Source: Macrostomum lignano
Taxonomy: Eukaryota
Length of the DNA stretch: 64,000 bases
Direction of reading: 5' to 3'
NCBI GenBank assembly: GCA_002269645.1
Contig: NIVC01001915.1
Coordinates: forward strand, 62,001 to 126,000
The notes beneath the pieces are model-generated. The model was not told where the DNA came from and searched no databases. It saw only the letters and a list, made by a program, of their open reading frames with translations. The position numbers and the translations under genes were made by a program. This document shows, piece by piece, positions 13,671 through 62,200 of the stretch (position 1 is the first letter of the stretch; each line of letters starts with the position of its first letter).

Positions 13671-14443
13671 CAACTTACTGACTAACTAACTAACTAACCA
13701 ACCAACGCACCTGCAGGTAGTCGGACACCAGCCGGTCAATCGGATTCCGAACCACCAGCACAAGTTTGCGCAGTGCCTGAGATTCGTTGCCGAAGAATCT
13801 GCTCATCCGAGCCGTCACGGCCGGTGTGTGGAAGTAGGCCGGCGTCTTCTCCGCCGTCAGCTGACCGGCCAGCGACAGCGGCATGCGGAGACGGTAGAGC
13901 TCCGGGCGCAGGGCCTCTTCGTCGGTGCCGTCGGCTTCGTCGGGGAACCGGTCGAAAAAGTGCGCCTCGCGTTCGGCGGCGGCCACGTCGGGGTGCAGCG
14001 CCAGGAAGCGGAGCGCCGCCCGGGTGCCGCCTTTGCGAACCCCAATGATGATGCAGGCCGGCAGGCGGCGAGCTCGGGGCGGCCCGGGATGAGGGGCGGA
14101 TTGCTCAGAATGAGGGGCGGATTGCTCAGGATGAGGGGCGGATTGCTCAGAATGAGGGGCGGATTGCTCAGAATGAGGGGCGGATTGCTCAGAATGAGGG
14201 GCGGATTGCTCAGAATGAGGGGCGGATTGCTCGGGATGAGGGGCGGATTGCTCAGGATGAGGGGCGGATTGCTCGGGATGAGGGGCGGATTGCTCGGGAT
14301 GAGGAGCGGAATCCGGAGCGGGAAACTGCGCAGACTTGAGAGCGGAAGCCGCCACATCATTTCCAGTCGATGCCGCGCGCTTCAACCGAGCGGAGACCAT
14401 CAGGCAGCTGAGGGCGCACCAGTTTGCAAAATAATAATTAAGC
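12575..14443 (-). CDS. HS3ST: Heparan sulfate glucosamine 3-O-sulfotransferase (HS3ST1/5-like); 5' end uncertain
   Basis: Exon 14443?-13711 carries LPACIIIGVRKGGTRA (5'-PSB), LHPDVAAAE.E.HFFD, EKTPAYF and VRNPIDRLVSDYLQ (3'-PB). Exon 13075-12575 carries SLYDVHM, HIVDGD, FYYNATRGFYC...CLAESKGR.HP and the stop. Phase-0 GT-AG intron 13710-13076. Confidence 0.93.
13108..13702. repeat. (ACTA)n microsatellite making up almost the whole HS3ST intron
   Basis: About 145 tetramers with ACTG/ACCA interruptions. Confidence 0.98.
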
Positions 14444-14869
14444 CTGCAGCTGAGCAAAGCCGAACTTCATCAGCAGCACTAATTCAAGGATTAATGATGC
14501 TGAGTGAGACAAGAAAGGAAGATATGCTCGTTTTTGTAGCGATTAGAAAGGGAAATGGCGGTCGAGACTCTTCTTGGGTCGATGCATCAGCAAGTTGGGA
14601 GGGGAGATGACAGAGCCAATCAGTCAGTCAGTGCTGCTGCACAAATTTTCTGTTGCCAAGGAATTTCTAGCGGCTGACTTGGCCTAACGAGCTGTCCGCT
14701 TCAGCACAGAATGCGGTCTGACTTGATCTGGGCTTGGGCTGGCACTCCTGGGTGGGGGAGAGCTGAAGTGTAACTGAAATGGGGCCTGAAGAGGGGCTGA
14801 ATGTTAGCTGAAGGGACACTGAAAGGGGAACTAAAGGGAGACTTGACGTTGGACACGAAGACGACCTGA

Positions 14870-16150: not shown

Positions 16151-16902
16151 TGAAGGGAAATCTAAATGGGAACCTGAAGGAAGCCACAGACTCCTGAAGT
16201 ATCAGAAACAGGCAACTTCTCAGCAATTAAATCAGCTTCGAACAGAATAAAAATTCTCACCAAAGCAGAATGCAGAGCGAGTTCATTTTTACACCTGCAT
16301 GAATTCGAAGAAATCCCGAGAAATCAAAGTATTTTTAGAAACTGTGCTTTATCGCAGGGATAAATAGCGAAGGTTCGCTCTGAAGGATGGGGAATATTAT
16401 ATATGAAGCTGGGGATCTGCAAGTTGCCCACTGGTTGGCTGGGGCGCTCCAACCGAATTCCCTCCATTGAGAGTCCAATCAGCAACTGGAGGCTTTTTTG
16501 AGTTCGAAATAAAATATAAGCCGAATTGATTTGGGATATTGGGATAAAAATGGGAGGTAAAGTAAATTGGGATGTTGGAAAATGCCCACACGGTTGGGAC
16601 TTGTCGAGGGCCAGAAATCCCGCGGCTTCAGGCATGGGAAATCAGCGCTGCATTGTACTTGTCCCCCCAGCTGCCGCCGTGGGAATTCCGGCTGGAGAAG
16701 CTGCCTTCTTATCTTCCTCAAGCTCCTTTGAGGAGCTTGTCGTGCCTGAGCTGTCAGGGAGTACTGGATGGAGAGTCTGGATGGCCACGGAGCTCTGGCT
16801 GCGATAATTTCTCTAAATTCCCCATTTACACACAGAAGATGTACATTAAGATAGAAGATAGATATATTAGAAGACATAGATTAGATTAGATTAGAATGAA
16901 AT

Positions 16903-17630
<728 letters not shown>

Positions 17631-21232: not shown

Positions 21233-24200
21233 TCACTCCAGCAGAGTCGCAGCTCTATCGTCCAGCACCTCGGCGCGCCACCAGCCCTCCGGCTGACGCG
21301 GCGAAGTGAGCCGCAGTTGCAGGCCGCCGTCGTCCTCCTCGCCCAGGGCGATCAGCTTAGCGGCGCAGCCGTCAGCGAATCGGCGGCCAGCGGGCGGCCG
21401 CAGGCGACACTCGGCGGCCAGGGCTGGGACTCCGGCGGCCGAGACGGGCACTCGGCGAACCCGGAGCTCGTCGGCGGCTGAACCGAACGACTCGTTGCCG
21501 TAGTCGACAAAACGGACTCGCAGCCGGCCTGCGGCATCGGCCGGCTCAACAATGCGAGCTCGGTACCAGTCCTCCTCGTACAGGGCGATGCAGGGCGTCC
21601 CGACAGTGAGCTCAGCTGCCGACAGCGCCGGCTGGTCAGCTGCCCGTTCCTGCAGCAGTTCGTGCAGCTCCTCCAGCCGCGTTTGCTCATCCACCCGCTG
21701 GGCAAACAGCGCCAGCTCCTCCGGCCCAATGCGACAGGCGTGGCAAACCAGGCCAACGAACTGCGGCGGAAAATTCCCTGCCGGGATGGTCGACTGCTCC
21801 TCGCTCTGCTGCTGCGGGCGGTCTGGCTGATTCTGTTGCTGCTGCTGCGGGAGGTCTGGCTGATTCTGTTGCTGCTGCTGCGGGCGGTCTGGCTGATTCT
21901 GTTGCTGCTGCTGCGGGCGGTCTGGCTGATTCTGTTGTTGCTGCTGCGGGAGCGTCTGATTCTGGGGCTGAAACTGGAAAGCAGACTGCAGCGTCTGCGG
22001 ATTCTGCTGTTGCTGCTGCTGCTGCGGGAGCGTCTGATTCTGGGGCTGAAACTGGAAAGCAGACTGCAGCGTCTGCGGATTCTGCTGTTGCTGCTGCTGC
22101 TGCGGGAGCGTCTGATTCTGGGGCTGAAACTGGAAAGCAGACTGCAGCGTCTGCGGATTCTGCTGTTGCTGCTGCTGCGGGAGCGTCTGATTCTGGGGCT
22201 GAAACTGGAAAGCAGACTGCAGCGTCTGCGGATTCTGCTGTTGCTGCTGCTGCGGGAGCGTCTGATTCTGGGGCTGAAACTGGAAAGCAGACTGCAGCGT
22301 CTGCGGATTCTGCTGTTGCTGCTGCTGCTGCGGGAGCGTCTGATTCTGGGGCTGAAACTGGAAAGCAGACTGCAGCGTCTGCGGATTCTGCTGTTGCTGC
22401 TGCTGCGGGAGCGTCTGATTCTGGGGCTGAAACTGGAAAGCAGACTGTAGCGTCTGCGGATTCTGCTGTTGCTGTTGCTGCGCACTGCTCTCAGATGAGT
22501 TGCTCTGCCGCCTGCTAGATGGCGACTGCTGCTGCTGCTGGTCGCGCAGCTGACGCAGCCGGGTCAAGACGTCGCGCCCGTTGACCTCCAGCGCTACCTG
22601 GACGCCTGAGGCTCGCCAGCAGGTAAAAGTTACAATAGCCGGCCGGCCAATCAGCTTGCGCAGGCTGGCAATGACGCTGGGCCCGGCCAGCTCGCCTGGC
22701 TGCAGGTTGGCCAGCGAGCAGTGCAGGGCGCAGGGCGGCTGCTCGGCCAGACTGTCCGGCAGTGGCGCCAACAGGCTGCCTGGTAGACAGGCCAGTCTGC
22801 CAGTGTCTACCAGACGGACCAGGTAGTGTCCACCGGACTCGCCCTGGCTGAGTACCAGAGCCCGGCGCCAGCAGGCGTCCCGCTGATCCATGGCCAGACA
22901 GGCGGAGTCCCGAGGGAAATTGTCCTCAGCATTGTCGGCCTGATCTCCGCCGCCCCGGCCGGGCCTGGCCGGAGGCCGGTAGCGACTGAGGCGATCCGCG
23001 ATTCGCTTGGCAATGGCGGCGTCGCAGTCCATCAGGATGTGCAGCGAGGCGGCGTGGTCAGCGTGCAGCACGACGCAACTGTCGCGGCCTTTGACCGGCG
23101 TCCTTAGCAACGGATGAGGAAAATTAAAAATCTTTAAAACCCATCAGCTACTTTCACATTTCTTAGCATTCTTGTCAGCTACTTTCACATTTCTTAGCAT
23201 TCTTGACAGCTACTTTCACATTTCTTAGCATTCTTGTCAGCTACTTTCACATTTCTTAGCATTCTTGACAGCTACTTTCACATCTCTTAGCATTCTTGAC
23301 AGCTGCTTTCACATTTCTTAGCATTCTTGTCAGCTACTTTCACATTTCTTAGCATTCTTGTCAGCTACTTTCACATTTCTTAGCATTCTTGTCAGCTACT
23401 TTCACATTTCTTAGCATTCTTGTCAGCTACTTTCACATTTTTTAGCATTCTTGTCAGCTACTTTCACATTTTTTTAGCCAAGGACTACTCAAGTAGGATG
23501 GGAAACCTTGTTTCTTGGAAAATTTGAGGAGGCAGACCCAATATTCATCTTTTAATATGCTGTGCCAATAAGTAGCCCTATTGATATTCATAGAGCTTTT
23601 TGTTTAGAAAATTAGGGTTCTATATTTAATCATTCTACGCACAATTAGCTAACCAACCTGACAGGATAGGCCGCAGGCAGACCAACAGTCTCAGCTGTGG
23701 GCGAGTGCTTTTTACTATTCGAAGCCGGCTTCAGCGCGTGCAGCAGCTCGGGCAGCAGACTCAAATCGGGACTGAATGAGACCTCAACAGTGGAGCCTAG
23801 AGACACGGACACCACGGTCAGCCGGCCGCACTGCAACTGGCCGGTCGGAAAGTCGGCCTGTCCGAAGTTGGCTAGCCGAGCGGTGAGAGACCAGGCCGGG
23901 GTCGACGCGACAGTTCTCGGCGCAACAGTCAGCTCGGCCAGCTTGGCAACAACTTCAACTCCGTAGTCAACCAGCAGCAGTCGGCAGTGGGATTCTGGGC
24001 CGGCCCCGTCTGGCAGCTCCATCAGCAGGGTTGCCCGTCGAGCAGGAGCTGTCGGTGTCGCGGCCAGCATCACGGGGGTGCCAGCGGGCAGGGGCGGTGT
24101 GGCCGGGCTGACATCCTGGCCGGGCAGCTTGTCGGCCAGCCGGCGCAGATGCCGCCGGTCGTCTCGCAGTAAGAACCGGCCAGTGCCGGTGGCCGGGTCC

Positions 24201-27072
24201 AGCCAGCAGAGCAGGGCCGGCTGTGTCTGGCCGACCTTCAGGCGGCTGGCGGCTGCATAGGGCGGGATTCCCGGCTCTAGCGGGCGCAGGTCAGCCAGCC
24301 AGATCAGCCGGTGCGCATCGGCAAGGCTGAGCAGATTGACTGAGACAGCGGCACCAACTGTTGAAACCTCCTTGGCTGCGGCCGACACCGGCCGGCAGGC
24401 GATGCAGAAGGGATCGAGCTTGGCCAGCGGGTGGTCAAGCGGCAGCGGCTCAAGGCTGGGGACGGCGGCCAAATCAACAACAGTGCAGCCAAAGTCCACC
24501 AGGCGGAGCAGGCGGCGAGAGACAGCGGCCGCCGAGGCTTCGAAGCGGATCCGGACGGGGCCGCGCTGGGGCAGGCGGGCAACGAATAGCACCTGCCTGA
24601 CTGCGGCTGATGGCGGCGGCGGCGATGGCGGCGACATGAGCGGAGCGGAGCGCAGGAAGGCGTCCAAGTCGGCGGCCAGCTGGTCGAGCTTGCGTCGATC
24701 GGAGCGCTTCAGCAGGTGCACCAGCAGCTGGCCATCGTCGTCGGTCACGTGGCTAACATCGGCGGCGAACCAGGGATTGTCGCCATTGTCAGTGACAGCG
24801 GCAGCCGGTGAAGGCCGCTCTTCAGGTTGAACCCCGGACAGGCTGAGAAACCACGGATTGAGCTGCTCGCCCTGCTCCGAGCTCAGCTCAACGGGCACCG
24901 GAGTTTCAGCTGTCGCGGCCGGAAACTCCACCCACAGCTTCACATCATCCGCTTCCTCGTCTGCGCCGGATTCGAGTTCGAGCATTCTTTCGGCTAGGCT
25001 CGAACTCGCGACCTCCGGCCAGGAGTTGCCGAGGCCGGCCAGGCGGCAGTGGACGGCCTGAGGCGGCATCCGGTCAGCCAGTTCGTCCGGCAGCGGCGTC
25101 AAATCGGCGGCACTGAATTTGAGCTGTTCGCCAAAGTCCAGGGTTTCAACGCTGACCGAGCTGAGGTAATTATTCGGCGGCAGGACTCGAGCCCGGTACG
25201 CCAGGCCGGTGTCGGGTTGGAAGGCGCACACCAGCCTGCCCGGCTGCAGGACCGGCTGAATCTCCACGTTCTGTGCGCGGGGATCGAATACAATGGGATA
25301 TTATCCTATGAGATTCGCTGCTAATATTCGAGTTTTATCTCATGAGATTCGATGCTGATATTCGAGTTTTATCTCATGAGAATCGATACTGATATTCGAG
25401 TTTTATCTCATGAGATTCGATGCTGATATTCGAGTTTTATCTCATGAGAATCGATACTGATATTCGAGTCTTATCTCATGAGATTCACTGCTGATATTCG
25501 AGTTTTATCTCATGAGATTCGATGCTGATATTCGAGTTTTATCTCATGAGAATCGATACTGATATTCGAGTTTTATCTCATGAGAATCGATACTGATATT
25601 CGAGTCTTATCTCATGAGATTTGCTGCTGATATTCAAGTTTTATCTCATGAGATTCGATGCTGATATTCGAGTTTTATCTCATGAGAATCGATACTGATA
25701 TTCGAGTCTTATCTCATGAGATTCACTGCTGATATTCGAGTTTTATCTCATGATAATCGATGCTGATATTCGAGTTTTATCTCATGAGAATCGATACTGA
25801 TATTCGAGTCTTATCTCATGAGATTCGATGCTGATATTCGAGTTTTATCTCATGAGATTCGATGCTGATATTCGAGTTTTATCTCATGAGATTTGCTGCT
25901 GATATTCGAGCCTTATTTCATGAGAATCGATACTGATATTCGAGTTTTATCTCATGAGATTTGCTGCTGATATTCGAGTTTTATCTCATGAGATTCGATG
26001 CTGATATTCGAGTTTTATCTCATGAGATTCGATGCTGATATTCGAGTTTTATCTCATGAGAATCGATACTGATATTCGAGTCTTATCTCATGAGATTCAC
26101 TGCTGATATTCGAGTTTAATCTCATGAGATTTGCTGCTGATATTCGAGTCTTATCTCATGAGATTAGCTGCTGATATTCGAGTCTTATCTCATGAGATTC
26201 ACTGCTGATATTCGAGTTTTATCTCATGAGATTTGCTGCTGATATTCGAGTCTTATCTCATGAGATTCACTGCTGATATTAGAGTGTAATCTCATGAGAT
26301 TTGCTGCTGATATTCGAGTCTTATCTCATGAGATTCACTGCTGATATTAGAGTGTAATCTCATGAGATTTGCTGCTGATATTCGAGTCTTATCTCATGAG
26401 ATTAGCTGCTGATATTCGAGTCTTATCTCATGAGATTCACTGCTGATATTCGAGTTTTATCTCATGAGATTTGCTGCTGATATTCGAGTCTTATCTCATG
26501 AGATTCACTGCTGATATTAGAGTGTAATCTCATGAGATTTGCTGCTGATATTCGAGTCTTATCTCATGAGATTCACTGCTGATATTAGAGTGTAATCTCA
26601 TGAGATTTGCTGCTGATATTCGAGTCTTATCTCATGAGATTAGCTGCTGATATTCGAGTCTTATCTCATGAGATTAGCTGCTGATATTCGAGTCTTATCT
26701 CATGAGATTCACTGCTAATATTCGAGTTTTATCTCATGAGATTTGCTGCTGATATTCGAGTCTTATCTCATGAGATTCACTGCTGATATTCGAGTCTTAT
26801 CTCATGAGATTGGCTGCAAGGAACTGAGTAAAAGAATTATATTACCACAGAATCACTCCAACAGTTCCATACCTGCATTGATCGGTGGTGCTTAATAAGA
26901 TCTTTAGTGAGCATTCGTAAGCCACTGCCGCCATCATCACGCAGTTGAACATGGAAACTACGTGGACTCTTAAAATTTGTACAGGCACATAAGTGCCAGC
27001 CAGTTGGAATTGTATTCATATTTGAGCAGACATTGAGAGGCCAACTGAAATATGGATTGTTATAAACCATTT
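21233..27072 (-). CDS. Multi-Tudor-domain protein (TDRD/Tudor class, at least 5 extended Tudor domains); 5' end uncertain
   Basis: Exons 27072 or 27044-26873 (CACTNFKSPRSFHVQL), 25270-23658 (GRLVCAF...AYRARV...TLDFGE; RLVDFG; LLVDYG) and 23102-21233 (CWRRALV...RLVDTG; VGTPCIALYEEDWYRARIV...RFVDYGN). The junctions are phase 0 and phase 2 and are compatible. AATAAA at 21066-21061. Confidence 0.88.
23145..23478. repeat. 31-bp intronic minisatellite
   Basis: CAGCTACTTTCACATTTCTTAGCATTCTTGT, about 10.5 copies. Confidence 0.97.
25310..26812. repeat. 34-bp intronic minisatellite with ATCTCATGAGAT palindrome
   Basis: TGATATTCGAGTTTTATCTCATGAGATTCGATGC, about 44 copies; fills nearly the whole Tudor-gene intron. 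Confidence 0.97.
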
Positions 27073-31479: not shown

Positions 31480-32235
31480 GGACAGGGGTGTCAGAGGACA
31501 GGGATGTCAGATGACAGGGGTGTCAGAGGACTAGGGCGTCAGAGGACATGTGTCAGAGGACTGAGGTGTCAGAGGAGATGTATGTTAGAGGACTGGGGTG
31601 TCAGAGGACTAGGGTGTCAGAGGACTGGGGTGTCAGAGGACTACAATGTCAGAGACCAGGGGTTATCAGATCAGAGGACTGGGGTGTCAGAGGACTACAA
31701 TGTCAGAGACCAGGGGTTGTCATATATCAGAGGACTGGGGTGTCAGAGGACTACAATGTCAGAGACCAGGGGTTGTCATATATCAGAGGACTGGGGTGTC
31801 AGAGGACTACAATGTCAGAGACCAGGGGTTATCAGATCAGAGGACTGGGGTGTCAGAGGACTACAATGTCAGAGACCAGGGGTTGTCATATATCAGAGGA
31901 CTGGGGTGTCAGAGGACTACAATGTCAGAGACCAGGGGTTGTCATATATCAGAGGACTGGGGTGTCAGAGGACTACAATGTCAGAGATCAGGGGTTGTCA
32001 TGTATCAGAGGACTGGGGTGTCAGAGGACAACAATCTCAGAGACCAGGGGTTGTCATATATCAGAGGACTGGGGTGTCAGAGGACAACAATCTCAGAGAC
32101 CAGGAGTTGTCAGATCAGAGGACTGGGGTGTCAGAGGACAACAATCTCAGAGACCAGGGGTTGTCAGATCAGAGGACTGGGGTGTCAGAGGACTACAATC
32201 TCAGAGACCAGGGGTTGTCAGATCAGAGGACTGGT
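31480..32235. repeat. Composite ~48-56-bp minisatellite built on GTCAGAGGAC
   Basis: GAGGACTGGGGTGTCAGAGGACTACAATGTCAGAGACCAGGGGTTGTCATATATCA units. Confidence 0.93.
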
Positions 32236-33440
32236 CGGAGTGGTCAGAAGGACAATGTTCTGAAACTGTAGCAACTCATTCATTGATGGATTTTGCTTCA
32301 AGAATGAACTCATACCACAAACTAATTTATTGTATAGTTGAGACAAGGAATGAAGCAACATCAGACACACTTGAAGCTGCCCCAGCAAATTTTAATAATA
32401 TATATTTATTTGAAACAAACAATTCATGGTTGAATTGCAATGAAAGAGAGCTCGAATGCAAAATGAATACTAAAAGCCTTGAAAATGGACACCTGATGTT
32501 TTAAACAGACTCTGATTCTGTATAGATGACTCTATGGGTGCAATCAGATAGATTTATAGTGCAATTGATGGCCGCTTGTCATGTCTACAACTGTCTACAT
32601 GTTACAACTGGAGACAGCGTGGAGCGTCTCTGAAGACGACAAAAACAATCTAGTTATATGATCATTGGATGACGCTGATATTCTTACCAGCTAATTTGTA
32701 CAGTTTTGTGTACTAAAACGCATCAGCTATCGATTGATGAAAAATGAGAAATAGCATGGAGTTGGGATGATAAAACATGAGATATAACATGGGGAGTCGG
32801 AACAACGGTTATACCTATTGGGAATAAAAAGCATTTGCCCTCAGTAGACCTGCACCGCTACGGAACTATGGAACTTTACTGCACTGTAAACACGGCTGCA
32901 CAACAGGGTAACTAAACAATATAATAATAGAATGGGCTTGTAGGGATATAACAAAAATTTTCTATTTACTGAACAATTTAAATTTCGCGCGCAAGACGTG
33001 CTATAGGTCACGTGACTGCTGAACGCGACAATTCAAAGTTGCATGGATCACAGTGCGGCTTCGGTGCAGTTGCCATAGGCAGCTGTCATATAGCTGGATT
33101 AGGGCAAAACATATTGAAGAAAAGATTATTTAAAATTGATTATGAAAAAGAAATGAGCGAAGCTTAGCATGGCGCGAATTGGGGGTGTTAACAAGCTTTA
33201 CTGCTATATATTAATAGAAATGCTAGTTCAAATTGGTACAGGTACAAGTGTACGCACAATAGGTCTCTTGTACACCCAATGCCTCCCAGTTGCCAGTCAG
33301 TTTGCCGGTCATGCGAGTTCCTGGAAAATAAAAAAATGAATTTAAACATTAAAAGGCGGTCTAAGTAACTCCTCAGCTGACCTATAGAGTCGATAGTTAG
33401 AGTGGGATTGCAGTTGGGGGCGCTGCTTTACCTGCGCACT

Positions 33441-33527
33441 GCGGATGAATGACCACCCGGTGACAGGTATACCGCTTTGTCAGCAGGTAAGCTAATTGCC
33501 TGTGTCACCGGCTGATCACCAACCCGC
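33441..33527 (-). ncRNA. mir-36: miR-36 family pre-miRNA (miR-35/36 seed CACCGGG); mature 3p about 33463-33442
   Basis: The minus strand reads UCACCGGGUGGUCAUUCAUCCGC, matching the protostome miR-36 pattern (UCACCGGGU...CAUUCAU, recalled from memory). It pairs along about 23 nt with an upstream arm GCGGGUUGGUGAUCAGCCGGUGACA, with two mismatches and G:U pairs. The loop region is long (about 37 nt). Confidence 0.75.
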
Positions 33528-35034
33528 TTTGATCGCAAGTTTGGTCTCCTGGTTACCGGAGTAATTTCTCCGGTTGATGAATTCGGAATAGGAGTTCATT
33601 CTAGACGTCTGAAATTCGGCTAAATAAATTCAGTTACGAGCTTGAAACCTCTGTTCAGTCAAAACACAAATTGCGCCATTAGCTTATGCAGAAGTAGGCT
33701 GCGTGCATCTCCGCTGCTGCATTGCCCTTCCTCAATTTCGTCTGCCACTCCGGAGTGGAAGATCTACTTTGCGCTGGGAAAGTGCGCATGCACTCAGTAG
33801 ACTGAATGTTTTTGTCAGCGTCATAACTCAACATAAGGGGAGCAATGCTCTACATGTATATCGGGATTTTTATGAGCAAAACAGAGAAAGACAATCCAGC
33901 TGCTTACGTTTCGCCTTCCTTCCGGGTTTGTGCGTGTGTCAGAGCGCCAACACACCCGGTCGGCCCCCTGTAGGGGGCGGGCAGCGCAGAACACCAGGCT
34001 CTCCGGTCTCGCTCTTGTACCCACCCAGAATAAGGCGGCCGGGGGGAGCCACCTCGAGCGAACCCCCGGCCTTTTTATGCAGCGCCGGCTCCGCTGTCCC
34101 GGCCTGACCCATTCCGCCCACCCCCAACGGCGCACAGGGAGTGTGCCAGGTCAACGCGGGACTGCGGCCTCGGGAGGGTAGGGGCGGCGGATAGGTCAGG
34201 CAGGAGAGCCTCTCTGTACCTCCCTTAACCCTCTCCCTCTCTCTCCCTCTCTCTTATTCCGTCTCTTTCGCTCTCTCTCCCTCCTCTCTCGACCCTCGCC
34301 AACCCGGCGGTCCGGTCGTCTATTCGTCTCATCCAACTCCTGAGGTCGGCCGTACTGCTTTGGTGCACACGCGGTAAGGAGAGAAGGGGAGAGAGAGGGA
34401 AGAGAGAGAGAGACATTTGAGGCGCGCAACCCCAAGGCCAGAGCAACCCAATCCAGCCCACCCACACGCATGGCATCTAGAAATGTGTTCGCACTAGTTA
34501 AGGGCAGAGGGGGAGTGGGAGACCCCCTCCGTATCCAACTCGTTCACCCCCGGGATTTGCCAGGGAACAGAGTGGTTCTAAACCGCATGGACGGTTCCTC
34601 CCTTCCAGTTAAAATCGATGAGGAAGAATGATAATATGCTGAGCGGCAGCAGCGGAGGGGAGAAGGAATGGGGAAGCAGAGGTCACCTCAGGTCACCCGC
34701 TTTGGTCTACAGTCCGCAGTCCCAATGTCGGCATGCAGAGGAGAAATCACGTGATTACCGGATTCATTGCGATGAAGCTGACAAACCAAAGCTCAAAGAG
34801 CCTCGCCTTACTGTATATCTGAATAGATGGAGATAGATACTGTAGACAGCCTGGGACTCAAGCTCAAAAGCATCTATGAGACAAAGTTTCTGACCTGAGA
34901 AATGGAACCCCCTGCACTTCCCCAGCCTCCCTTTCTCCTGGCATCTTAAATCCTGCACACACGACTCGCAGGGTCAGCTCAGGTCAACTCGGTCGCTGTC
35001 TTGCCGCGCGCGTTCCATCATCACGTGATTCTGG

Positions 35035-36813: not shown

Positions 36814-37319
36814 CTATAAGTAGAGTCTGCAGCAGCAGCGCTATCTCTATAGGATGAAGTTAAAGCCTGAAGTGCTTCTTCCATGCTTGTCGGACTCAGT
36901 CAATGTTGTAAAGAAATTCTGCGATCGAAGCGTCATCGAAAAGTGTTTATAAGGCGACAACAATATTGCCAGTGCCCAGCTATCTGGCACACTTAAATCA
37001 ATACCGCTCACAAATCATTTGCCACTATGAAATGCAGTAAGTGCAGTTAATATTTGTTCAGAGCCGCTAGCTGGACTGAGTGACTCATTCATGTATCGGG
37101 CTCGGGTTGTACGGTCATAGCTATAAGAGTTCGCTTGACATTTTGATTGTATTTGAAAACAGTTTGGCATGAATTGGCCAGTTGGTTTTGCACGACAGCT
37201 GCGCGACTGTTGAGGCTCCAGCTGCTAATGTGGTTGATGCAATTCACTTCGTTGACGATTCACAGTGCAGGGCAAGGAGAGACATGGATAGATACAGGTA
37301 GAGGGACTGGTAAACATAT

Positions 37320-38362
37320 TGAGACAGAGACAGATAAAGACAGGAAGAGGCAGAGAGTCAGAGACAAAGAGACAGACAGAAAGACAGAAAGAGACAGGCA
37401 GAGACAGACAGAGACAGACAGAGACAGACAGAGACAGACAGAGACAGACAGAGACAGACAGAGACAGACAGAGACAGACAGAGACAGACAGAGACAGGCA
37501 GAGAGACAGAGACAGGCAGAGAGACAGAGACAGACAGAGAGACAGAGACAGACAGAGAGACAGAGACAGACAGAGAGACAGAGACAGGCAGAGAGACAGA
37601 GACAGGCAGAGAGACAGAGACAGGCAGCTAGACAGAGACAGGCAGAGACAGGCAGAGAGACAGAGACAGGCAGAGAGACAGAGACAGGCAGAGACAGGCA
37701 GAGAGACAGAGACAGGCAGAGAGACAGAGACAGGCAGAGACAGGCAGAGAGACAGAGACAGTCAGAGAGACAGAGACAGGCAGAGACAGGCAGAGAGACA
37801 GAGACAGGCAGAGAGACAGAGACAGGCAGAGACAGGCAGAGAGACAGAGACAGGCAGAGAGACAGAGACAGGCAGAGACAGGCAGAGAGACAGAGACAGG
37901 CAGAGAGACAGAGACAGGCAGCTAGACAGAGACAGGCAGAGACAGGCAGAGAGACAGAGACAGGCAGAGAGACAGAGACAGGCAGAGACAGGCAGAGAGA
38001 CAGAGACAGGCAGAGAGACAGAGACAGGCAGAGACAGGCAGAGAGACAGAGACAGGCAGAGAGACAGAGACAGGCAGAGAGACAGAGACAGGCAGAGAGA
38101 CAGAGACAGGCAGAGAGACAGAGACAGGCAGAGAGACAGAGACAGGCAGAGAGACAGAGACAGGCAGAGAGACAGAGACAGGCAGAGACAGGCAGAGAGA
38201 CAGAGACAGGCAGAGAGACAGAGACAGGCAGAGACAGGCAGAGAGACAGAGACAGGCAGAGACAGGCAGAGAGACAGAGACAGGCAGAGAGACAGAGACA
38301 GGCAGAGACAGGCAGAGAGACAGAGACAGGCAGAGAGACAGAGACAGGCAGAGAGACAGAAA
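37320..38362. repeat. Compound AG-rich microsatellite (GACA/GAGA/GGCA)
   Basis: About 1 kb; source of the spurious ORFs at 37147-38550. Confidence 0.97.
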
Positions 38363-38719
38363 CAATCAGAGGATGCGTGAACAGAAAAGCCACAGATCAG
38401 CACAAAGCAGTTCAGTGCACAGATGTGCATTCCAGAATTCATTCACATCTCTATAATTCTCATGTTTCCAACACGAAACTACGCAGCCCAAAGTCTGCCA
38501 GCCTTGCCCAGCAAAATGCCAAACGGACTGTCTGTCAGTCCAGTGCTTAGCCCCAGTTCCGGCTCGGCACGAATGACATTTGCGAGTGCATTCGAACCCT
38601 GGAATGGCGCAGCAAAGGCGGGCTGGAATGCAGCCTCGTTGGTTTGGCGATTCGTACAATGTACTTTTAGGTTTGCCAAGCTTGCAAACCGGCATTTAGA
38701 TGATCCAGCTGGCTATTCA

Positions 38720-40734: not shown

Positions 40735-41160
40735 CTGACTGCTCACTGACTGCTCACTGACTGCTCACTGACTGCTCACTGACTGCTCACTAGCTGCTCA
40801 CTGGCTGCTCACTGACTGCTCACTGACTGCTCATAGCCTGCTCACTGACTGCTCACTGACTGTTCACTGACTGCTCACTGACTGCTCACTGACTGCTCAC
40901 TGACTGCTCACTGGCTGCTCACTGGCTGCTCACTGGCTGCTCACTGATTGCTCACTGACTGCTCACTAGCTGCTCACTGGCTGCTCACTGACTGCTCACT
41001 GACTGCTCATAGCCTGCTCACTGACTGCTCACTGACTGTTCACTGACTGCTCACTGACTGCTCACTGACTGCTCACTGACTGCTCACTGGCTGCTCACTG
41101 GCTGCTCACTGGCTGCTCACTGATTGCTCACTGATTGCTCACTGATTGCTCACTGCCTGC
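40735..41160. repeat. 11-bp minisatellite ACTGACTGCTC
   Basis: About 38 copies. Confidence 0.95.
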
Positions 41161-41163
41161 TAT

Positions 41164-42903
<1,740 letters not shown>

Positions 42904-43935
42904 AGCTGCTCTCTGTTATCTCCGTACGGCAGCTGCTTGAGTCATTCAGTCTGGGCTTTTCAAATTCCAGCAACGTTCTTCGTAAACTGGTCTCGTGTTT
43001 CCATTTTTGTTGACAATTTTCTGACTCGCCCTGTATAGGCGCTAGCAGATCCTGCGGCACTGAATTTAATTAGTCCTCTAGGCCTGAAGCAGACATGCTG
43101 CAGACACCGGGGCCGGAAGTTGATCAGGCTTATGCGGCTGTCTGTCATTCAGAGATGCGAGCTTCAGCAAACAGGCCACACTTACTTTCTCCAGGTGGCT
43201 CATTAGCATAATCTACCTGTGAAAGCCGCCATTCATTGGTATTAGTTGACTCATGCATAACCTTTGCTGGATTTTATGCTGAAATTCAAATATTTCTCTT
43301 AGCAATCTCTGCCCTGCAAGCAACAAATATTCCTGTTCTGCTACTTACAGTAGTAGACACTGTGTTAATACTATTTTTCACGAACTAAACCGCATTGAAA
43401 TAATAAATTTATTCTTTCAGCTCTGCCAACATGCAAAGAAAGACTGAGAAACTCAAGCCAAGATGCTCCATTGTTCGTGATTGTGTTTACTCTGAGCAAT
43501 AAAAATTTAACCCCAAATTCAAGCTCAGCTGTTGCCAAATTTATGCGAGTCTCGAGACAAATATTTACAGAAACAAGAATCTCTGCGGTGTTTAAATGCA
43601 CTGCAGCCTGCAGGATCCAAAGATGTTTTTACAAACTTCTATAGCACTGCCGGGCAGAGGCTTGTGTATAAACTGTGGGAAGACATTAAAAAAATATTGA
43701 GCTTCGAGTAAATAAATATTCATAAATTAGCCGAAATCTAACAAAAACAATAACAAAAATTTGAGCAGTAAAGGAGATTGTTCATGGAAAATAATACACA
43801 GTAAAGGTATGTCTGACTTTAGAAGACCTAACACAATCAAGGACGGCGAGCTTTGTTGTTTAAAAATGGTTTTCAAGGCTTGGATATAAGCTAAAAATAC
43901 ACTGCGGAGATAGGAACTGTAATTTCCTTCAATTG

Positions 43936-44292: not shown

Positions 44293-47200
44293 TCATTGTT
44301 GAACCAGCCGGCTGCCAGAATGCTGCTGCCTCTCCAGCAGGTGCTCCAGGCCGCTGTCCATCAGACGGGCCACCAGACGGTCGATGAACTGAGTCAGGTC
44401 TCGGACTCGCTCCTGGCGGTCAGCGGACAGCGCGGAGGATTTCGCCTCGGCCTCGGTTACTCGAAGCTCGGCGGCGGTGGCAGCAGCTTCGGCCTGGCGC
44501 AGGCGGGCCAGCAGCTGGGCGGAGTCGCGCCTGACGGACTCGAGCTCTGAACGGAGGCCATCGATGCGCAGCTCCAGCAGCTGCCGGGCGGCTTCGGCGG
44601 CTTCTTGGATATGCCATCGGCCTCGGAGGAGGAGCTGCTGCTGCCTGCTGAGATGGCGGAGAGGATTGAGATTTGCGCAGCTATTGTTTTTGTCACTGTT
44701 AGAAGTCGCGGTCGGGATCGAGGTGCCAGATTCGGTGTCAGGAGTCTGATTTTAGTGTCAACAGAAGGGCCGATTTTAGTGTCGGCAGAGGGGCCGATTT
44801 TAGTGTCAGCAGAGGGGCCGATTTTAGTGTCAGCAGAGGGGCCGATTTTAGTTTCAGCAGAGGGGTGGATTTTAGTGTCAGCAGAGGGGCCGATTTTAGT
44901 GTCGGCAGAGGGGCCGATTTTAGTGTCAGCAGAGGGGCCGATTTTAGTGTCAGCAGAGGGGCCGATTTTAGTTTCAGCTGAGGGGTGGATTTTAGTGTCA
45001 GCAGAGGGGCCGATTTTAGTGTCGGCAGAGGGGCCGATTTTAGTGTCAGCAGAGGGGCCGATTTTAGTGTCAGCAGAAGGGCCGATTTTAGTGTCAGCAA
45101 AGGGGCCGATTTTAGTGTCAGCAGAGGGGCCGATTTTAGTGTCAGCAGAAGGGCCGATTTTAGTGTCAGCAGAGGGCCGATTTTAGTGTCAGCAGAGGGG
45201 CCGATTTTAGTGTCAGCAGAGGGGCCGATTTTAGTGTCAGCAGAGGGGCCGATTTTAGTGTCAGCAGAGGGGCCGATTTTAGTGTCAGCAGAGGGGCCGA
45301 TTTTAGTGTCAGCAGAGGGGCCGATTTTAGTGTCAGCAGAGGGGCCGATTTTAGTGTCAGCAGAGGGGCCGATTTTAGTGTCAGCAGAGGGGCCGATTTT
45401 AGTGTCAGCAGAGGGGCCGATTTTAGTGTCAGCAGAGGGGCCGATTTTAGTGTCAGCAGAGGGGCCGATTTTAGTGTCAGCAAAGGGGCCGATTTTAGTG
45501 TCAGCAGAGGGGCCGATTTTAGTGTCAGCAGAGGGGCCGATTTTAGTGTCAGCAGAGGGGCCGATTTTAGTTTCAGCAGAGGGGTGGATTTTAGTGTCAG
45601 CAGAGGGGCCGATTTTAGTTTCAGCTGAGGGGTGGATTTTAGTGTCAGCAGAGGGGCCGATTTTAGTGTCAGCAGAGGGGCCGATTTTAGTGTCAGCAGA
45701 GGGGCCGATTTTAGTTTCAGCAGAGGGGTGGATTTTAGTGTCAGCAGAGGGGCCGATTTTAGTTTCAGCTGAGGGGTGGATTTTAGTGTCAGCAGAGGGG
45801 CCGATTTTAGTGTCGGCAGAGGGGCCGATTTTAGTGTCAGCAGAGGGGCCGATTTTAGTGTCAGCAGAAGGGCCGATTTTAGTGTCAGCAGAGGGGCCGA
45901 TTTTAGTGTCGGCAGAGGGGCCGATTTTAGTGTCAGCAGAGGGGCCGATTTTAGTGTCAGCAGAGGGGCCGATTTTAGTGTCAGCAGAGGGGGCCAATTT
46001 TAGTGTCAGCAGAGGGGCCGATTTTAGTGTCAGCAGAGGGGCCGATTTTAGTGTCAGCAGAGGGGCCGATTTTAGTGTCAGCAGAGGGGCCGATTTTAGT
46101 GTCAGCAGAGGGGCCGATTTTAGTGTCAGCAGAGGGGCCGATTTTAGTTTCAGCAGAGGGGTGGATTTTAGTGTCAGCAGAGGGGCCGATTTTAGTGTCG
46201 GCAGAGGGGCCGATTTTAGTGTCAGCAGAGGGGCCGATTTTAGTGTCAGCAGAGGGGGCCGATTTTAGTGTCAGCAGAAGGGCCGATTTTAGTGTCAGCA
46301 GAGGGGGCCGATTTTAGTGTCAGCAGAGGGGGCCGATTTTAGTGTCAGCAGAGGGGCTGATTTTAGTGTCAGCACAAGGGCCGATTTTAGTGTCAGAAAA
46401 GTCACCGATTTTAGCATCATGGGTGTTCATTTTAGTATCAGTGACAGCGATTTTAGTATCAGGAACATCTGCTCCAGTGTCAGGGGTTGCACTCACTATT
46501 GTACAGGAGCACAAACTCCAGTGTCAGGGGTTGCACTCACTATTGTACAGGAGCACAAACTCCAGTGTCAGGGGTTGCACTCACTATTGTACAGGAGCAC
46601 AAACTCCAGTGTCAGGGGTTGCACTCACTATTGTACAGGAGCACAAACTCCAGTGTCAGGGGTTGCACTCACTATTGTACAGGAGCACAAACTCCAGTGT
46701 CAGGGGTTGCACTCACTATTGTACAGGAGCACAAACTCCAGTGTCAGGGGTTGCACTCACTATTGTACAGGAGCACAAACTCCAGTGTCAGGGGTTGCAC
46801 TCACTATTGCACAGGAGCACAAACTCCAGTGTCAGGGGTTGCACTCACTATTGCACAGGAGCACAAACTCCAGTGTCAGGGGTTGCACTCACTATTGTAC
46901 AGGAGCACAAACTCCAGTGTCAGGGGTTGCACTCACTATTGCACAGGAGCACAAACTCCAGTGTCAGACAGCGTCAAAAATAGCGCCACCTGTGGCTGCG
47001 TGCTGAGGAAAAACCGGCCCAGTCTCTCACCTTCATCGCCGCTGCTGACCACAGCGGCGAGTCGCCCGTTGACCTCGCCGACCCCGGCTACGCCGCCCTT
47101 CGACGGTAGCGGCGACAGCGCATCGTCAACTTCGTCTTCTTCAACGCCTTCATCAATATCTTTGTCATCGTCGGGTGTCTTCGTCGTGTCGTGTCGTCGG

Positions 47201-52387: not shown

Positions 52388-53107
52388 TCACCCAGACCAG
52401 CCTTTGCACTTTCGTTTCTCGTCGCTCAGCAGCTCCTCCAGGCAGCGGCGGTACTTGTCCCGCTCGCGCGTCACCGACTCCAGCTGCTGGCGCAGGCTGT
52501 CCAGCCTGCTCACCAGCCCGGCGCTCTCGTTGGCCAGCTCGGTCTGGGCGCTGTGTCGTCGCTGCCGGCAGGTCTGGGCGTAGCGCCGGTTCTTCAGCGT
52601 CCGCCGGCGCCGCTTCAACCGCTGCACCGTCGCTCGGGGAAGGCTGCGAAGCCGGGCGTTCAATTCGCGGATGCTCAGTGAGACCAGCTCCAAGTCAGTC
52701 GGAGCCGGAGCTGGCGCGGCCGCTGGCGGCGTTGCAGACGGCGGCGGGGGCAGCAGCGCCTGCTGCAGTGTCGGCGGCGGCGGCGGCGGCGACTTTTCAA
52801 AGAAGCTGCAATCGAAGTCGTAGCGGTCATCAAAGTTGCCTGGCTTGACGGCAGCGGTCCAGAGCTCGGGATCCAGCGGCGGTGGCCAGTCCTGCTGCTG
52901 CTGCTGAGGCTGCTGCTGCTGAGGCTGCAGAGGCGGGGCTGGAGGATAAGTGAAGGCGGTGGCGGAGGCTGGAGACGACACCGAACTGCCGGCGTTGTTG
53001 CCGGGGCTCACAGTCGGCGAAGTGAAGTCGGACAGCAGGTCGCACAGCAGGGTGCCATCGTCCGGTTCGACCAGGTCTGGCATGTTCTGCAGATTAAAAA
53101 ATGACAT
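52388..53107 (-). CDS. MAF: Maf-family bZIP transcription factor (large-Maf-like), single exon, 239 aa
   Basis: Extended homology region TDLELVSLSIRELN; basic region LKRRRRTLKNRRYAQTCR; leucine zipper; N-terminal P/Q/acidic region with DRYDFDCSFFEK, resembling the large-Maf YVNDFDLMKFEVK. GCCATG start context; AATAAA at 52074-52069. Confidence 0.93.
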   Translation of the reverse strand: MSFFNLQNMPDLVEPDDGTLLCDLLSDFTSPTVSPGNNAGSSVSSPASATAFTYPPAPPLQPQQQQPQQQQQDWPPPLDPELWTAAVKPGNFDDRYDFDCSFFEKSPPPPPPTLQQALLPPPPSATPPAAAPAPAPTDLELVSLSIRELNARLRSLPRATVQRLKRRRRTLKNRRYAQTCRQRRHSAQTELANESAGLVSRLDSLRQQLESVTRERDKYRRCLEELLSDEKRKCKGWSG

Positions 53108-56162: not shown

Positions 56163-56725
56163 TTTCCTCAAAAACCCGAGCCTCAAACCAAGTCTGTGTT
56201 GCAACAAACACAGAGACAATCAGTAAGCAATGAGGCCTGCAAGTCCGCTTCTCCCTAGGATGCAAGCTCCCTCTTCCTAATCTCTCGTCATTAGCCAAAG
56301 CTTCGTACCCCATTCCCAATTGAATTCTCGTCTTCAGTCACCTCCCGAGGCCCCCGCAGGCAAATGAGATCAGTTGTACTCATTTCCACAATTCTACTCC
56401 AGTTTCACAGGCCCAGACTGCTTAGATGGTGGGTCAAATAGGCAGAGCAACTCTGCTTTTTTCTTGGCCTAATCACGTCTTCCAGCCTGCAGCTCCGGTT
56501 GCGGGGCCGCGGGCACGGCGGTTGGGAAATTACAATTGGCAATTCGCTGCAGCAGCTACCGAAGCCAACTGGCATTGTGCGGCCTTGGCTTCCTGCGCCC
56601 GGCCTCTCGGTCACTGGGCACGGCGGGGTTCTTTCTGCCGTCTCTTTTCTGCTGTTCTGCTTTGTGCTTTCTCTTCTGCTTGCCCGTGAGTGCCTGCTTG
56701 TTCTGTCTGTTTTCGTACCCCAATC

Positions 56726-57002
<277 letters not shown>

Positions 57003-57511
57003 GCATTCCTAAGAGATGCAGCCAGTCTCCGGAAGCCAAGCGAGTCCCCACCCGGGAGTCAAAGCGGCAGGCAATTAGTGCAGTTTCCCGATCAGCTGCG
57101 AGTTTCAGCCAAGCCTTTCACAGCGCAGCCTTGCGCTTGCCTGAATGAGTCGCAGCTGGTTGGATGCGGGCGTAACTGAAGTGCATCTGCTAAAGAAAGC
57201 TTTTCCATGGAGAAGAACCTCAATCAGAAAGTTTCACTGTAGCTGCTCTGTCACTTACTCACTGCAACTCTCACGACAGCATTGAAACCGAAGCTCAGCC
57301 TGATCAATCTTCCCTTGTTGTGCTCAAACCAATGCATTCTTCTGTCTGATCTGCCATGCGAGACTTGACCCGCAAGGACTTCCTTTTCACCAATGAATGA
57401 ATAGAAAAATTCCAACCCAGACTTTAGGTATGCAGGTACGAAGTTTATTGTAAAAAGGAACTGCAGTTTTTGCGGGGTTTGAATTGTTTTATGTAGACAG
57501 TGCTGCGGCAC

Positions 57512-57758
57512 TCAGTCAGTCAGTCAGTCAGTCAGTCAGTCAGTCAGTCAGTCAGTCAGTCAGTCAGTCAGTCAGTCAGTCAGTCAGTCAGTCAGTCAGT
57601 CAGTCAGTCAGTCAGTCAGTCAGTCAGTCAGTCAGTCAGTCAGTCAGTCAGTCAGTCAGTCAGTCAGTCAGTCAGTCAGTCAGTCAGTCAGTCAGTCAGT
57701 CAGTCAGTCAGTCAGTCAGTCAGTCAGTCAGTCAGTCAGTCAGTCAGTCAGTCAGTCA
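57512..57758. repeat. (CAGT)n microsatellite overlapping the GPCR stop codon
   Basis: About 61 pure tetramers. Confidence 0.99.
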
Positions 57759-60700: not shown

Positions 60701-61081
60701 GTACAGGTCGTACAGCAGCCGGCTGCCCACCTGGTGGTACTCGTAGAAAACACCAAGCACGTTGATGAGGAAATTGCCCAGGATGAAGACGGCGTCCACG
60801 AGGCAAAGGGCGGAGAGGATGGTGAACAGCGGGCAGCGGCGCGGCCGGCTGGCTCGCTGGAGGACCACGAAGGACAGCGCGTTGCCGATGATGCCCAGGA
60901 TGGAGACGAAGCCAGTCAGGTAGAAGGCGAGCACCGTGGTGGCTAGCTGGAAGCCCAGGTGACCATCGGCTGGAAACACCGGGCTGACCGAGTCCTCCAG
61001 TTCGGCTTCCGCCGCAGGCGAGGACGCCATGTTGATGGCGAGCTCGTCAACGTTCGATGAGATGACAGTGACTGAAGACAT
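57748..61081 (-). CDS. Class A peptide GPCR, FMRFamide-receptor-like
   Basis: Exon 61081-60116 covers TM1-5 (GIIGNALSFVVL; LCLVD; ITLLVSFERYNAVCRPL; IYNAPKYFE; YFVVP). A phase-0 intron follows. Exon 58095-57748 covers TM6-7 (FMLPNVI; TNFLVLINSCLNFVLYCLIGKRFR). Confidence 0.92.
58140..58726. repeat. 16-bp intronic minisatellite ACCACCTCACTCCCCA
   Basis: About 36 copies. Confidence 0.98.
59702..59982 (+). mobile_element. tRNA-derived SINE, apparently full length, in the GPCR intron
   Basis: A box TAGCCTAGTGG (59709-59719) and B box GGTTCGTTTCC (59753-59763); foldable tRNA-like head; central TTCACCCAGCTGTAAAATGGGTGCC; (TTA)n tail. A second copy lies at 43936-44068. Confidence 0.88.
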
Positions 61082-61113
61082 GGCGTGGGCGCTGCGGGCG
61101 GGAGCCGTGAGGG

Positions 61114-62200
<1,087 letters not shown>

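What the first reader, a model, noticed from the sequence alone, without database searches (positions are those of the whole stretch)
33441..33527. Unannotated miR-36-family hairpin with a variant mature sequence and a long loop
Seen: the 3p arm UCACCGGGUGGUCAUUCAUCCGC pairs with the 5p arm along about 23 nt; the roughly 37-nt terminal region can fold further (CAGGC/ACCTG). Established (from memory): miR-36 is a protostome family with seed CACCGGG, shared with C. elegans miR-35-42. Inference: a genuine miRNA gene that an ORF-based annotation would miss; positions 10-12 differ from the versions I recall.
Basis: partly seen in the sequence, partly recalled or inferred. Interest (0 to 1): 0.72.

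Follow-up and report, generated by a model that had tools for sequence, protein, structure and literature searches.

The report
Flatworm miR-36 microRNA hairpin gene
This is very probably a real microRNA gene of the old protostome miR-36 family in the flatworm Macrostomum lignano, missed because the genome was annotated for proteins only; it is an ordinary new member of a known family, and its long loop is normal for flatworm miR-36 genes.

Summary
The hairpin is there exactly as described, at window 33441-33527 on the minus strand. It folds at -45.0 kcal/mol (z = -6.0), and 21 of the 23 nt of the 3p arm are paired. The plus strand folds much worse, because four pairs are G.U.

The 3p arm, UCACCGGGUGGUCAUUCAUCCGC, matches published family members well beyond the seed:
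- 20/23 identical to sma-miR-36b-3p and Fhe-Mir-36-P3, differing at positions 1, 10 and 12.
- 19/22 identical to Biomphalaria bgl-miR-36a-3p.

A covariance model built without this sequence, from 9 environmental miR-36 hairpins and 2 Echinococcus precursors, finds it as the only significant hit in 64 kb (27 bits, E about 3e-5). Rfam itself misses it.

The window is Macrostomum lignano Mlig_3_7 (NIVC01001915.1). Its GenBank annotation excluded non-coding transcripts, and I found no paper linking Macrostomum to miR-36.

The "long loop" is not unusual for flatworms. Sequenced Echinococcus mir-36a and mir-36b precursors have 31 and 40 nt between their arms, against 39 nt here, and emu-mir-36b is also 85 nt long.

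Verdict: a new member of a known family. Expression and exact processing remain untested, and interest is low to moderate.

The parts
33430..33540 (-). Extended pri-miRNA stem: the pre-miRNA hairpin plus a basal stem (7 bp + 1 bp + 2 bp, separated by small internal loops)
   Evidence: Fold of 33425-33545(-): -56.9 kcal/mol, z = -6.31, paired from 33540 to 33430.
33441..33525 (-). Inferred pre-miRNA, 85 nt. Ends are inferred from 2-nt 3' overhang geometry, not from reads.
   Evidence: It is the same length as the sequenced emu-mir-36b precursor (85 nt). Model R2 aligns full-length to 33441-33524.
33503..33525 (-). 5p arm (predicted star strand), GGGUUGGUGAUCAGCCGGUGACA
   Evidence: Pairs with the 3p arm at 21 positions, including the variant positions 10-12 (G-C, G.U, U-A).
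33466..33502 (-). 37-nt structured apical region. It forms two mini-hairpins in the MFE, or alternatively a CAGG/CCUG extension.
   Evidence: The loop alone folds at -8.5 kcal/mol.
33441..33463 (-). 3p arm, the predicted mature miRNA UCACCGGGUGGUCAUUCAUCCGC (seed CACCGGG at nt 2-8, window 33456-33462)
   Evidence: It is 20/23 identical to sma-miR-36b-3p and Fhe-Mir-36-P3 and 19/22 identical to bgl-miR-36a-3p.
33422..33425 (-). CAGC = a CNNC motif starting 16 nt downstream of the inferred 3' Drosha cut. Weak supporting feature only.
   Evidence: Read directly. The role of CNNC in pri-miRNA recognition is from memory (Auyeung et al. 2013). About 18% chance of occurrence; not tested.

Best explanation
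This is a canonical, independently folded microRNA gene of the protostome MIR-36 family (the family that includes C. elegans mir-35 to mir-42) in the free-living flatworm Macrostomum lignano. It is transcribed from the minus strand.

Inferred mechanism:
1. The pri-miRNA forms a stem of about 35 bp (basal stem plus miRNA duplex) capped by a 37-nt structured apical region.
2. Drosha/DGCR8 cut near the base and release an 85-nt pre-miRNA.
3. Dicer, measuring from the ends, releases a 23-nt duplex.
4. The 3p strand UCACCGGGUGGUCAUUCAUCCGC is loaded into Argonaute and represses mRNAs that carry CCCGGUG seed matches.

What is shown and what is inferred: the hairpin, its strand specificity, its family-level sequence and structure match, and its host genome are shown. 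Transcription, the cleavage sites, the arm choice and the targets are inferred from what is known of the family.
For: - Structure: the hairpin is stable, strand-specific and of miRNA shape.
- 3p sequence: identical to published miR-36 sequences at the seed and at nt 13-23. It is 20/23 identical to sma-miR-36b-3p and Fhe-Mir-36-P3 and 19/22 identical to bgl-miR-36a-3p. None of 100 shuffles gave such a match.
- Where it varies: positions 10-12, the only internal differences, are also the only variable internal positions among 9 independent environmental miR-36 hairpins (AAA/AUA/GUA). The seed and the 3' region are kept and the centre drifts.
- Hairpin maintained: the 5p arm pairs with the variant bases. 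Against emu-mir-36a, the pair at mature nt 12 is changed on both sides (A-U to U-A).
- Independent model: R2, built from 11 other family members, scores this site 27.0 bits, E 3.2e-5. It is the only significant hit in 64 kb, full-length and on the correct strand.
- Flatworm architecture: sequenced E. multilocularis precursors have 31 and 40 nt between their arms and are 75 and 85 nt long. This one has 39 nt between the arms and is 85 nt long.
- Arm: the mature strand is on the 3p arm in every compared member.
- Host: M. lignano has Drosha, DGCR8, Dicer and Exportin-5 and an abundant 22-nt small-RNA population.
- No coding explanation: only a 36-aa ORF overlaps the site.
Against: - No expression data could be consulted.
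- The one published M. lignano small-RNA table lists no miR-36. That table kept only reads 100% identical to miRBase entries, which this variant could not be.
- Rfam finds nothing at gathering thresholds. Its mir-36_2 model gives only 12.8 bits, E 5.3. My first model, R1, gave only 13.7 bits, E 0.29, with the 5p arm misaligned.
- R2's 27 bits is modest. Antisense strands of true hairpins score 19-35 bits, and a non-hairpin site carrying the 22-mer pattern scores 18 bits.
- Conservation at the orthologous locus, in the other subgenomes or in other Macrostomum species, could not be examined.
Confidence: 0.85

Rival explanations
1. It is a real descendant of a miR-36 gene that is no longer processed efficiently: a decaying redundant copy in a neopolyploid genome. 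The bulky, branched apical region would impair Drosha/Dicer, and expression would come from other copies.
For: M. lignano carries three subgenomes 1.4-2.4% apart, so redundant copies are expected. A second contig, about 99% identical, holds the neighbouring Maf gene. The inter-arm region is 2-3 times longer than in 9 non-flatworm hairpins (41 nt against 12-24 nt). No miR-36 appears in the published M. lignano table.
Against: The stem is intact: 21/23 nt paired, with no disruption of the seed or the 3' end. The 5p arm matches the variant bases. Equally long loops occur in Echinococcus mir-36a and mir-36b, which are supported by sequenced 5p and 3p products. The subgenomes are too young for much decay to have occurred.
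Confidence: 0.08
2. It is a processed miRNA hairpin, but with a different register or dominant arm than predicted. For example, the alternative inner pairing (CUGACA in the loop with UGUCA) could shift the cuts, or 5p could dominate.
For: The loop contains CUGACA, a near copy of the distal 5p arm GUGACA. Model R2 preferred to pair this inner copy, with low posterior probability (0.5-0.6).
Against: The inner fold alone is worth only -10.7 kcal/mol, against -45.0 for the full stem. Outer stem pairs have probability 0.85 or more. Every compared family member uses the 3p arm with the same 5' U/C-CACCGGG start.
Confidence: 0.05
3. It is a chance or repeat-derived inverted repeat that merely resembles miR-36 and is not a miRNA gene at all.
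For: A 22-mer match with up to 3 mismatches is expected a few times by chance in a genome of this size (my own arithmetic: about 2.5e-9 per position). The window is very repeat-rich.
Against: The mismatches fall exactly in the family's variable centre, while the seed and 11 nt of the 3' end are perfect. The match sits on the 3p arm of a z = -6 hairpin in the family's register and on the G.U-favoured strand. There is only one copy in the window. The independent model detects it.
Confidence: 0.02

Closest known systems
sma-miR-36b-3p (Schistosoma mansoni) / Fhe-Mir-36-P3 (Fasciola hepatica): CCACCGGGUAGACAUUCAUCCGC
   Same: Same 23-nt length, same seed CACCGGG, identical nt 2-9, 11 and 13-23 (20/23), and both are flatworm sequences.
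   Different: Nt 1 is U here and C there. Nt 10 is G against A, and nt 12 is U against A. Orthology to the P1 or P3 paralogue cannot be assigned: the U at nt 1 matches Fhe-Mir-36-P1 and emu-miR-36a, while the 3' end matches P3.
emu-mir-36a and emu-mir-36b precursors (Echinococcus multilocularis)
   Same: Same architecture: mature strand on the 3p arm, and a long structured inter-arm region (31 and 40 nt there, 39 nt here). emu-mir-36b is also 85 nt long. Both are intergenic.
   Different: The 3' halves of the mature strands differ (emu-36a ...CAUUCCUUGC, emu-36b ...UUAUUACGCCU). The loop sequences are not alignable.
bgl-miR-36a-3p (Biomphalaria) and 9 environmental miR-36 hairpins (L003-L007, L010-L012, L014)
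   Same: Nt 1-9 and 13-22 are identical. All are 3p-arm hairpins, and the centre (nt 10-12) is the variable part of the family.
   Different: Their pre-miRNAs are 57-68 nt with 12-24 nt between the arms. Nt 10-12 are AUA, AAA or GUA there and GGU here.
C. elegans mir-35 to mir-42 and Rfam mir-36_2 (RF04298, clan CL00088)
   Same: Same seed and same 3p-arm location (alignment; the family relation is from memory and from the 'P' = protostome label in PMC8016320).
   Different: There is no similarity beyond about nt 10. The nematode hairpins have short loops and are clustered. The Rfam score is only 12.8 bits against a gathering score of 46. No second family member lies in this 64-kb window.

Membership tests
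MIR-36 microRNA family (miR-35/36 seed family, Protostomia) | Seed CACCGGG at nt 2-8 of the mature strand | tested here: met
   Window 33456-33462(-) within UCACCGGGU....
MIR-36 microRNA family (miR-35/36 seed family, Protostomia) | Sequence similarity to accepted members outside the seed | tested here: met
   20/23 identical to sma-miR-36b-3p and Fhe-Mir-36-P3. 19/22 identical to bgl-miR-36a-3p, with 0 of 100 shuffles matching.
MIR-36 microRNA family (miR-35/36 seed family, Protostomia) | The conserved strand lies on the 3p arm of an imperfect hairpin with at least 16 paired positions in the duplex | tested here: met
   21/23 nt paired. -45.0 kcal/mol, z = -5.97, specific to the minus strand. 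The arm is the same as in all compared members.
MIR-36 microRNA family (miR-35/36 seed family, Protostomia) | Recognised by a sequence-and-structure profile built from other members | tested here: met
   Own model R2 (11 members, window excluded): 27.0 bits, E 3.2e-5, full length. The E-value is rough. Antisense controls score 19-35 bits and a sequence-only control scores 18 bits. Earlier model R1: 13.7 bits, E 0.29.
Rfam mir-36_2 (RF04298) / clan CL00088 | Score at or above the curated gathering threshold (46 bits) | tested here: not met
   12.8 bits, E 5.3, on a 131-nt search. Nothing in the whole window at gathering thresholds. That model's consensus resembles the short-loop nematode hairpins (alignment; the attribution to nematodes is from memory).
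MIR-36 microRNA family (miR-35/36 seed family, Protostomia) | Host is a protostome | tested here: met
   The window is NIVC01001915.1 of GCA_002269645.1, which is Macrostomum lignano Mlig_3_7. mir-36 is labelled protostome-level in PMC8016320.
Bona fide miRNA gene (MirGeneDB-type criteria) | Reads from both arms, homogeneous 5' ends, 2-nt 3' overhangs from Drosha and Dicer | not testable with these tools
   No small-RNA read data are available here. The published table is restricted to exact miRBase matches and lacks miR-36.
Bona fide miRNA gene (MirGeneDB-type criteria) | Conservation of the locus in related genomes (arms conserved, loop free to vary) | not tested
   The paralogous contig NIVC01001446.1 could not be reached at this position: there was no anchor gene within 10 kb. 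No other Macrostomum genome is accessible.

The most novel reading that the evidence does not exclude
The enlarged, structured apical region may be a lineage-specific functional feature of flatworm mir-36 genes rather than neutral slack. It is 37-40 nt in Macrostomum, a member of the early-branching Macrostomorpha, and in cestodes, against 12-24 nt elsewhere. It could, for example, be a docking site for a regulator of processing that gates miR-36 output in stem cells or the germline. That would date the feature to the base of Platyhelminthes.
Probability: 0.1. Interest if true: 0.4.

Novelty: new member of a known kind. Interest (0 to 1): 0.2.

Why it matters
M. lignano is a transgenic regeneration and stem-cell model. 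Neither the held literature nor its GenBank record gives it a curated miRNA annotation.

- A confident miR-36 locus adds one conserved family to that species' repertoire.
- It shows that Rfam-threshold scans miss flatworm mir-36 genes because of their long loops.
- It places the long-loop architecture in both an early-branching free-living flatworm and the parasitic cestodes.
- The family is biologically relevant. The planarian sme-miR-36b is enriched in neoblasts (PMC3854530). Schistosome miR-36 is found in secreted vesicles. The C. elegans mir-35 family is essential in embryos (from memory).

None of this changes how the family is understood.

Tried and rejected
1. Rfam: nothing at gathering thresholds in the whole window. 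Only a sub-threshold mir-36_2 hit appeared, alongside an equally weak mir-138 hit.

2. Second CACCGGGT site at 53900(+): no miR-36-like 3' half, so a chance match.

3. Loop origin by tandem duplication: I noticed 14/25 identities at a 25-nt offset, and a near copy of the distal 5p arm in the loop (CUGACA against GUGACA). It is not significant: 48 of 400 shuffles do as well, and the best ungapped repeat is no better than shuffles. Dropped as unsupported.

4. Fetching the same hairpin on the paralogous contig NIVC01001446.1: the nearest gene on record is 19 kb away and flanks are limited to 10 kb. Look-ups of nearer ORFs found no gene on record. I ran no further search on an estimated 20% chance of reaching a copy about 99% identical.

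5. Identifying relatives through proteins: the Maf ORF returned only itself and the Tudor ORF returned nothing.

6. First covariance model, with flanks (R1): it aligned the loop as if it were the 5p arm and scored only 13.7 bits. MAFFT made the same misalignment.

7. Four of the 13 metagenome pattern hits (L008, L009, L013, L015) are GC-rich sites that do not form hairpins, so chance matches.

8. miRNA cluster: no second family member in the window or in the environmental contigs, apart from one weak hit in L012.

Full report
OBSERVATION

On the minus strand, window 33527->33441 reads GCGGGUUGGUGAUCAGCCGGUGACA [37 nt] UGUCACCGGGUGGUCAUUCAUCCGC.
- The 87 nt fold into one hairpin of -45.0 kcal/mol. 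Shuffles average -25.5 +/- 3.3, giving z = -5.97, and none of 200 shuffles folds as well.
- With flanks the helix continues into a basal stem: 33430-33540, -56.9 kcal/mol, z = -6.31.
- Twenty-one of the 23 nt of the 3p arm are paired, with pair probabilities of 0.85 or more. The repeat finder reports the same two arms with 37 nt between them.
- The plus strand of the same DNA folds much worse (-33.3 kcal/mol, z = -2.87), because four pairs are G.U. The structure therefore belongs to the RNA that carries the CACCGGG seed.
- The apical 37 nt are structured. In the MFE they form two mini-hairpins.
- Only a 36-aa ORF overlaps the site.

WHERE THE WINDOW COMES FROM

A single-exon Maf-type bZIP ORF (52388-53107, minus strand) is recorded on two contigs of NCBI assembly GCA_002269645.1. 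The window is NIVC01001915.1, with record coordinate = window coordinate + 62000. That accession is the Macrostomum lignano Mlig_3_7 assembly.
- Its GenBank annotation was deliberately filtered to exclude non-coding transcripts, so "unannotated" is right for the deposited record.
- The second contig, NIVC01001446.1, is 94-99% identical over the shared stretch. This fits the three subgenomes of this neopolyploid, which are 1.4-2.4% apart.

FAMILY ASSIGNMENT

Published mature sequences were taken from papers, not from memory.

| Name | Sequence | Source |
|---|---|---|
| bgl-miR-36a-3p | ucaccggguauacauucauccg | |
| emu-miR-36a-3p | UCACCGGGUAGACAUUCCUUGC | |
| emu-miR-36b-3p | UCACCGGGUAGUUAUUACGCCU | |
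| sja-miR-36-3p | ccaccggguagacauucauucgc | |
| sma-miR-36b-3p | ccaccggguagacauucauccgc | |
| Fhe-Mir-36-P1 | TCACCGGGTAGACATTCATTCAC | |
| Fhe-Mir-36-P3 | CCACCGGGTAGACATTCATCCGC | |

The window's 3p arm, UCACCGGGUGGUCAUUCAUCCGC, is 20/23 identical to sma-miR-36b-3p and Fhe-Mir-36-P3, differing at nt 1, 10 and 12. It is 19/22 identical to the Biomphalaria sequence, differing at nt 10-12. Searching the window with the Biomphalaria 22-mer at up to 3 mismatches gives this one site and none in 100 shuffles.

INDEPENDENT COMPARATORS

A scan of metagenome contigs for TCACCGGGTNNNCATTCATCCG returned 13 loci.
- Nine are clean hairpins with the motif on the 3p arm. The other four are GC-rich sites that do not form hairpins.
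- In the nine, nt 10-12 are AAA, AUA or GUA, while nt 1-9 and 13-22 were fixed by the search pattern. So the M. lignano variant lies in the part of the molecule that also varies among members sharing this 3' half. That fits selection on the seed and the 3' region.
- In the M. lignano hairpin the variant bases are all paired (G10-C, G11.U, U12-A). Against emu-mir-36a, the pair at nt 12 is changed on both sides.

PROFILE TESTS

- Rfam finds nothing at gathering thresholds. On 131 nt it gives mir-36_2 only 12.8 bits, E 5.3, against a gathering score of 46.
- Model R1, built from the nine environmental hairpins with flanks, found only this site in the window, but weakly (13.7 bits, E 0.29). It forced the loop into the 5p arm.
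- Model R2 was built from the nine hairpins trimmed to pre-miRNA extent plus the two Echinococcus precursors, without the window. It scores 33441-33524(-) at 27.0 bits, E 3.2e-5, full length. The next hit is E 1.5, in a simple repeat.
- Controls: training hairpins score 52-76 bits, their antisense strands 19-35 bits, and a non-hairpin site carrying the exact pattern 18 bits.

So 27 bits is real but modest support, and the E-values are rough.

THE LONG LOOP

Between the nucleotide opposite mature nt 1 and mature nt 1 there are 41 nt here, against 12-24 nt in the nine environmental hairpins. Their pre-miRNAs are 57-68 nt, against 85 nt here. However, the E. multilocularis precursors, which were defined from sequenced 5p and 3p products, are 75 nt (mir-36a, 31 nt between the products) and 85 nt (mir-36b, 40 nt between the products). 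The equivalent figure here is 39 nt. The long apical region is therefore the normal flatworm architecture for this family and not a peculiarity or defect of this locus. It also explains why short-loop profiles (Rfam, R1) fail. I tested whether the loop arose by a 25-nt tandem duplication (14/25 identities; a CUGACA copy of the distal 5p arm). It is not significant.

MECHANISM (INFERRED)

M. lignano has Drosha, DGCR8, Dicer, TRBP and Exportin-5, and an abundant 22-nt, 5'-U-biased small-RNA class.
- The stem geometry fits canonical processing: a basal stem of about 13-15 nt below the inferred cut, a 23-nt duplex, and 2 bp above it.
- A CNNC motif (CAGC) starts 16 nt after the inferred 3' cut (read; the motif's role is from memory, and its chance of occurrence is about 18%).
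- The predicted products are 5p GGGUUGGUGAUCAGCCGGUGACA (33525-33503) and 3p UCACCGGGUGGUCAUUCAUCCGC (33463-33441). The 3p strand would be the guide, as in every compared member, targeting CCCGGUG sites.
- Likely biology, by analogy only: sme-miR-36b is neoblast-enriched in planarians, schistosome miR-36 is abundant and secreted in vesicles, and the C. elegans mir-35 family is embryonic-essential (from memory).

WHAT IS NOT SHOWN

- Expression. The only published M. lignano miRNA table kept reads 100% identical to miRBase entries and lists no miR-36. That is uninformative for a variant sequence.
- Locus conservation. The subgenome copy could not be reached.
- Prior description. No paper in the held library pairs Macrostomum with miR-36 or contains the mature sequence. 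I cannot check MirGeneDB or miRBase directly.

VERDICT

This is a well-supported new member of a known miRNA family in a genome annotated only for proteins.
1. Only nt 10 and 12 (and nt 1) differ from the closest flatworm sequence.
2. The long loop is typical of flatworm mir-36.
3. Rfam alone would not have called it.

Interest is low to moderate. No step had to be referred.

Noticed in passing
window 34095-34205 (both strands), within a GC-rich block at about 33800-34500: A second strong inverted repeat lies about 570 nt upstream of the miR-36 hairpin on the minus strand. Its arms are CCUGACCUAUCCGCCGCCCCUACC / GGGGGUGGGCGGAAUGGGUCAGG, with about 50 nt between them. It folds at -60.2 kcal/mol (z -3.2) on the minus strand and -58.4 (z -2.3) on the plus strand. 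It could be a second hairpin of the same primary transcript, a promoter-proximal element, or a repeat. No credible Rfam match.
   Followed up: partly
window 33478-33483 vs 33503-33508 (minus strand): The apical loop contains CUGACA, a near copy of the distal 5p arm GUGACA, and it can pair with the same UGUCA of the 3p arm. Model R2 chose this inner pairing with low confidence. The inner fold alone is only -10.7 kcal/mol. A duplication origin is not statistically supported.
   Followed up: yes
window 52388-53107 (-); L002 10001-10720: A single-exon Maf-type bZIP gene (Pfam bZIP_Maf) encodes an identical 239-aa protein on two contigs of the assembly, NIVC01001915.1 and NIVC01001446.1. Their unique DNA is about 99% identical and their tandem arrays differ in length. 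These are probably subgenome copies of the neopolyploid.
   Followed up: partly
window 21233-25267 (-): Two long ORFs (625 and 540 aa) carry Tudor domains (E 9e-24 and 1.5e-12) and are interrupted by a long Q-rich repeat. The 540-aa ORF found no relative, not even itself, in the large protein collection, so this gene seems absent from the recorded gene calls.
   Followed up: partly
window 16891-17625, 41135-43038, 61029-62275; also 31500-32500, 37150-38550, 44600-47000, 56500-58850: The window is unusually rich in long microsatellite and minisatellite arrays: (TCTA)n up to about 1.9 kb, (TCTG)n-like arrays, and 24-nt and longer tandem units. These produce long spurious ORFs on several frames.
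   Followed up: no
window 13690-14457 (-) and 60002-61081 (-): An exon-like ORF with a sulfotransferase domain (E 3e-7) and a rhodopsin-type GPCR-like ORF (29.6 bits, just under the Pfam cut-off of 30.5) show that the window holds ordinary animal genes at low density.
   Followed up: no
L004, L005, L006, L011, L012 (metagenome contigs JAAUX*/JAAUY*) and L003, L007, L010, L014: Public 'metagenome' contigs contain textbook animal miR-36 hairpins. Several carry the exact Biomphalaria mature sequence, so they hold invertebrate (probably mollusc-like) DNA. L012 has a weak second hit 670 nt away (16.8 bits).
   Followed up: partly
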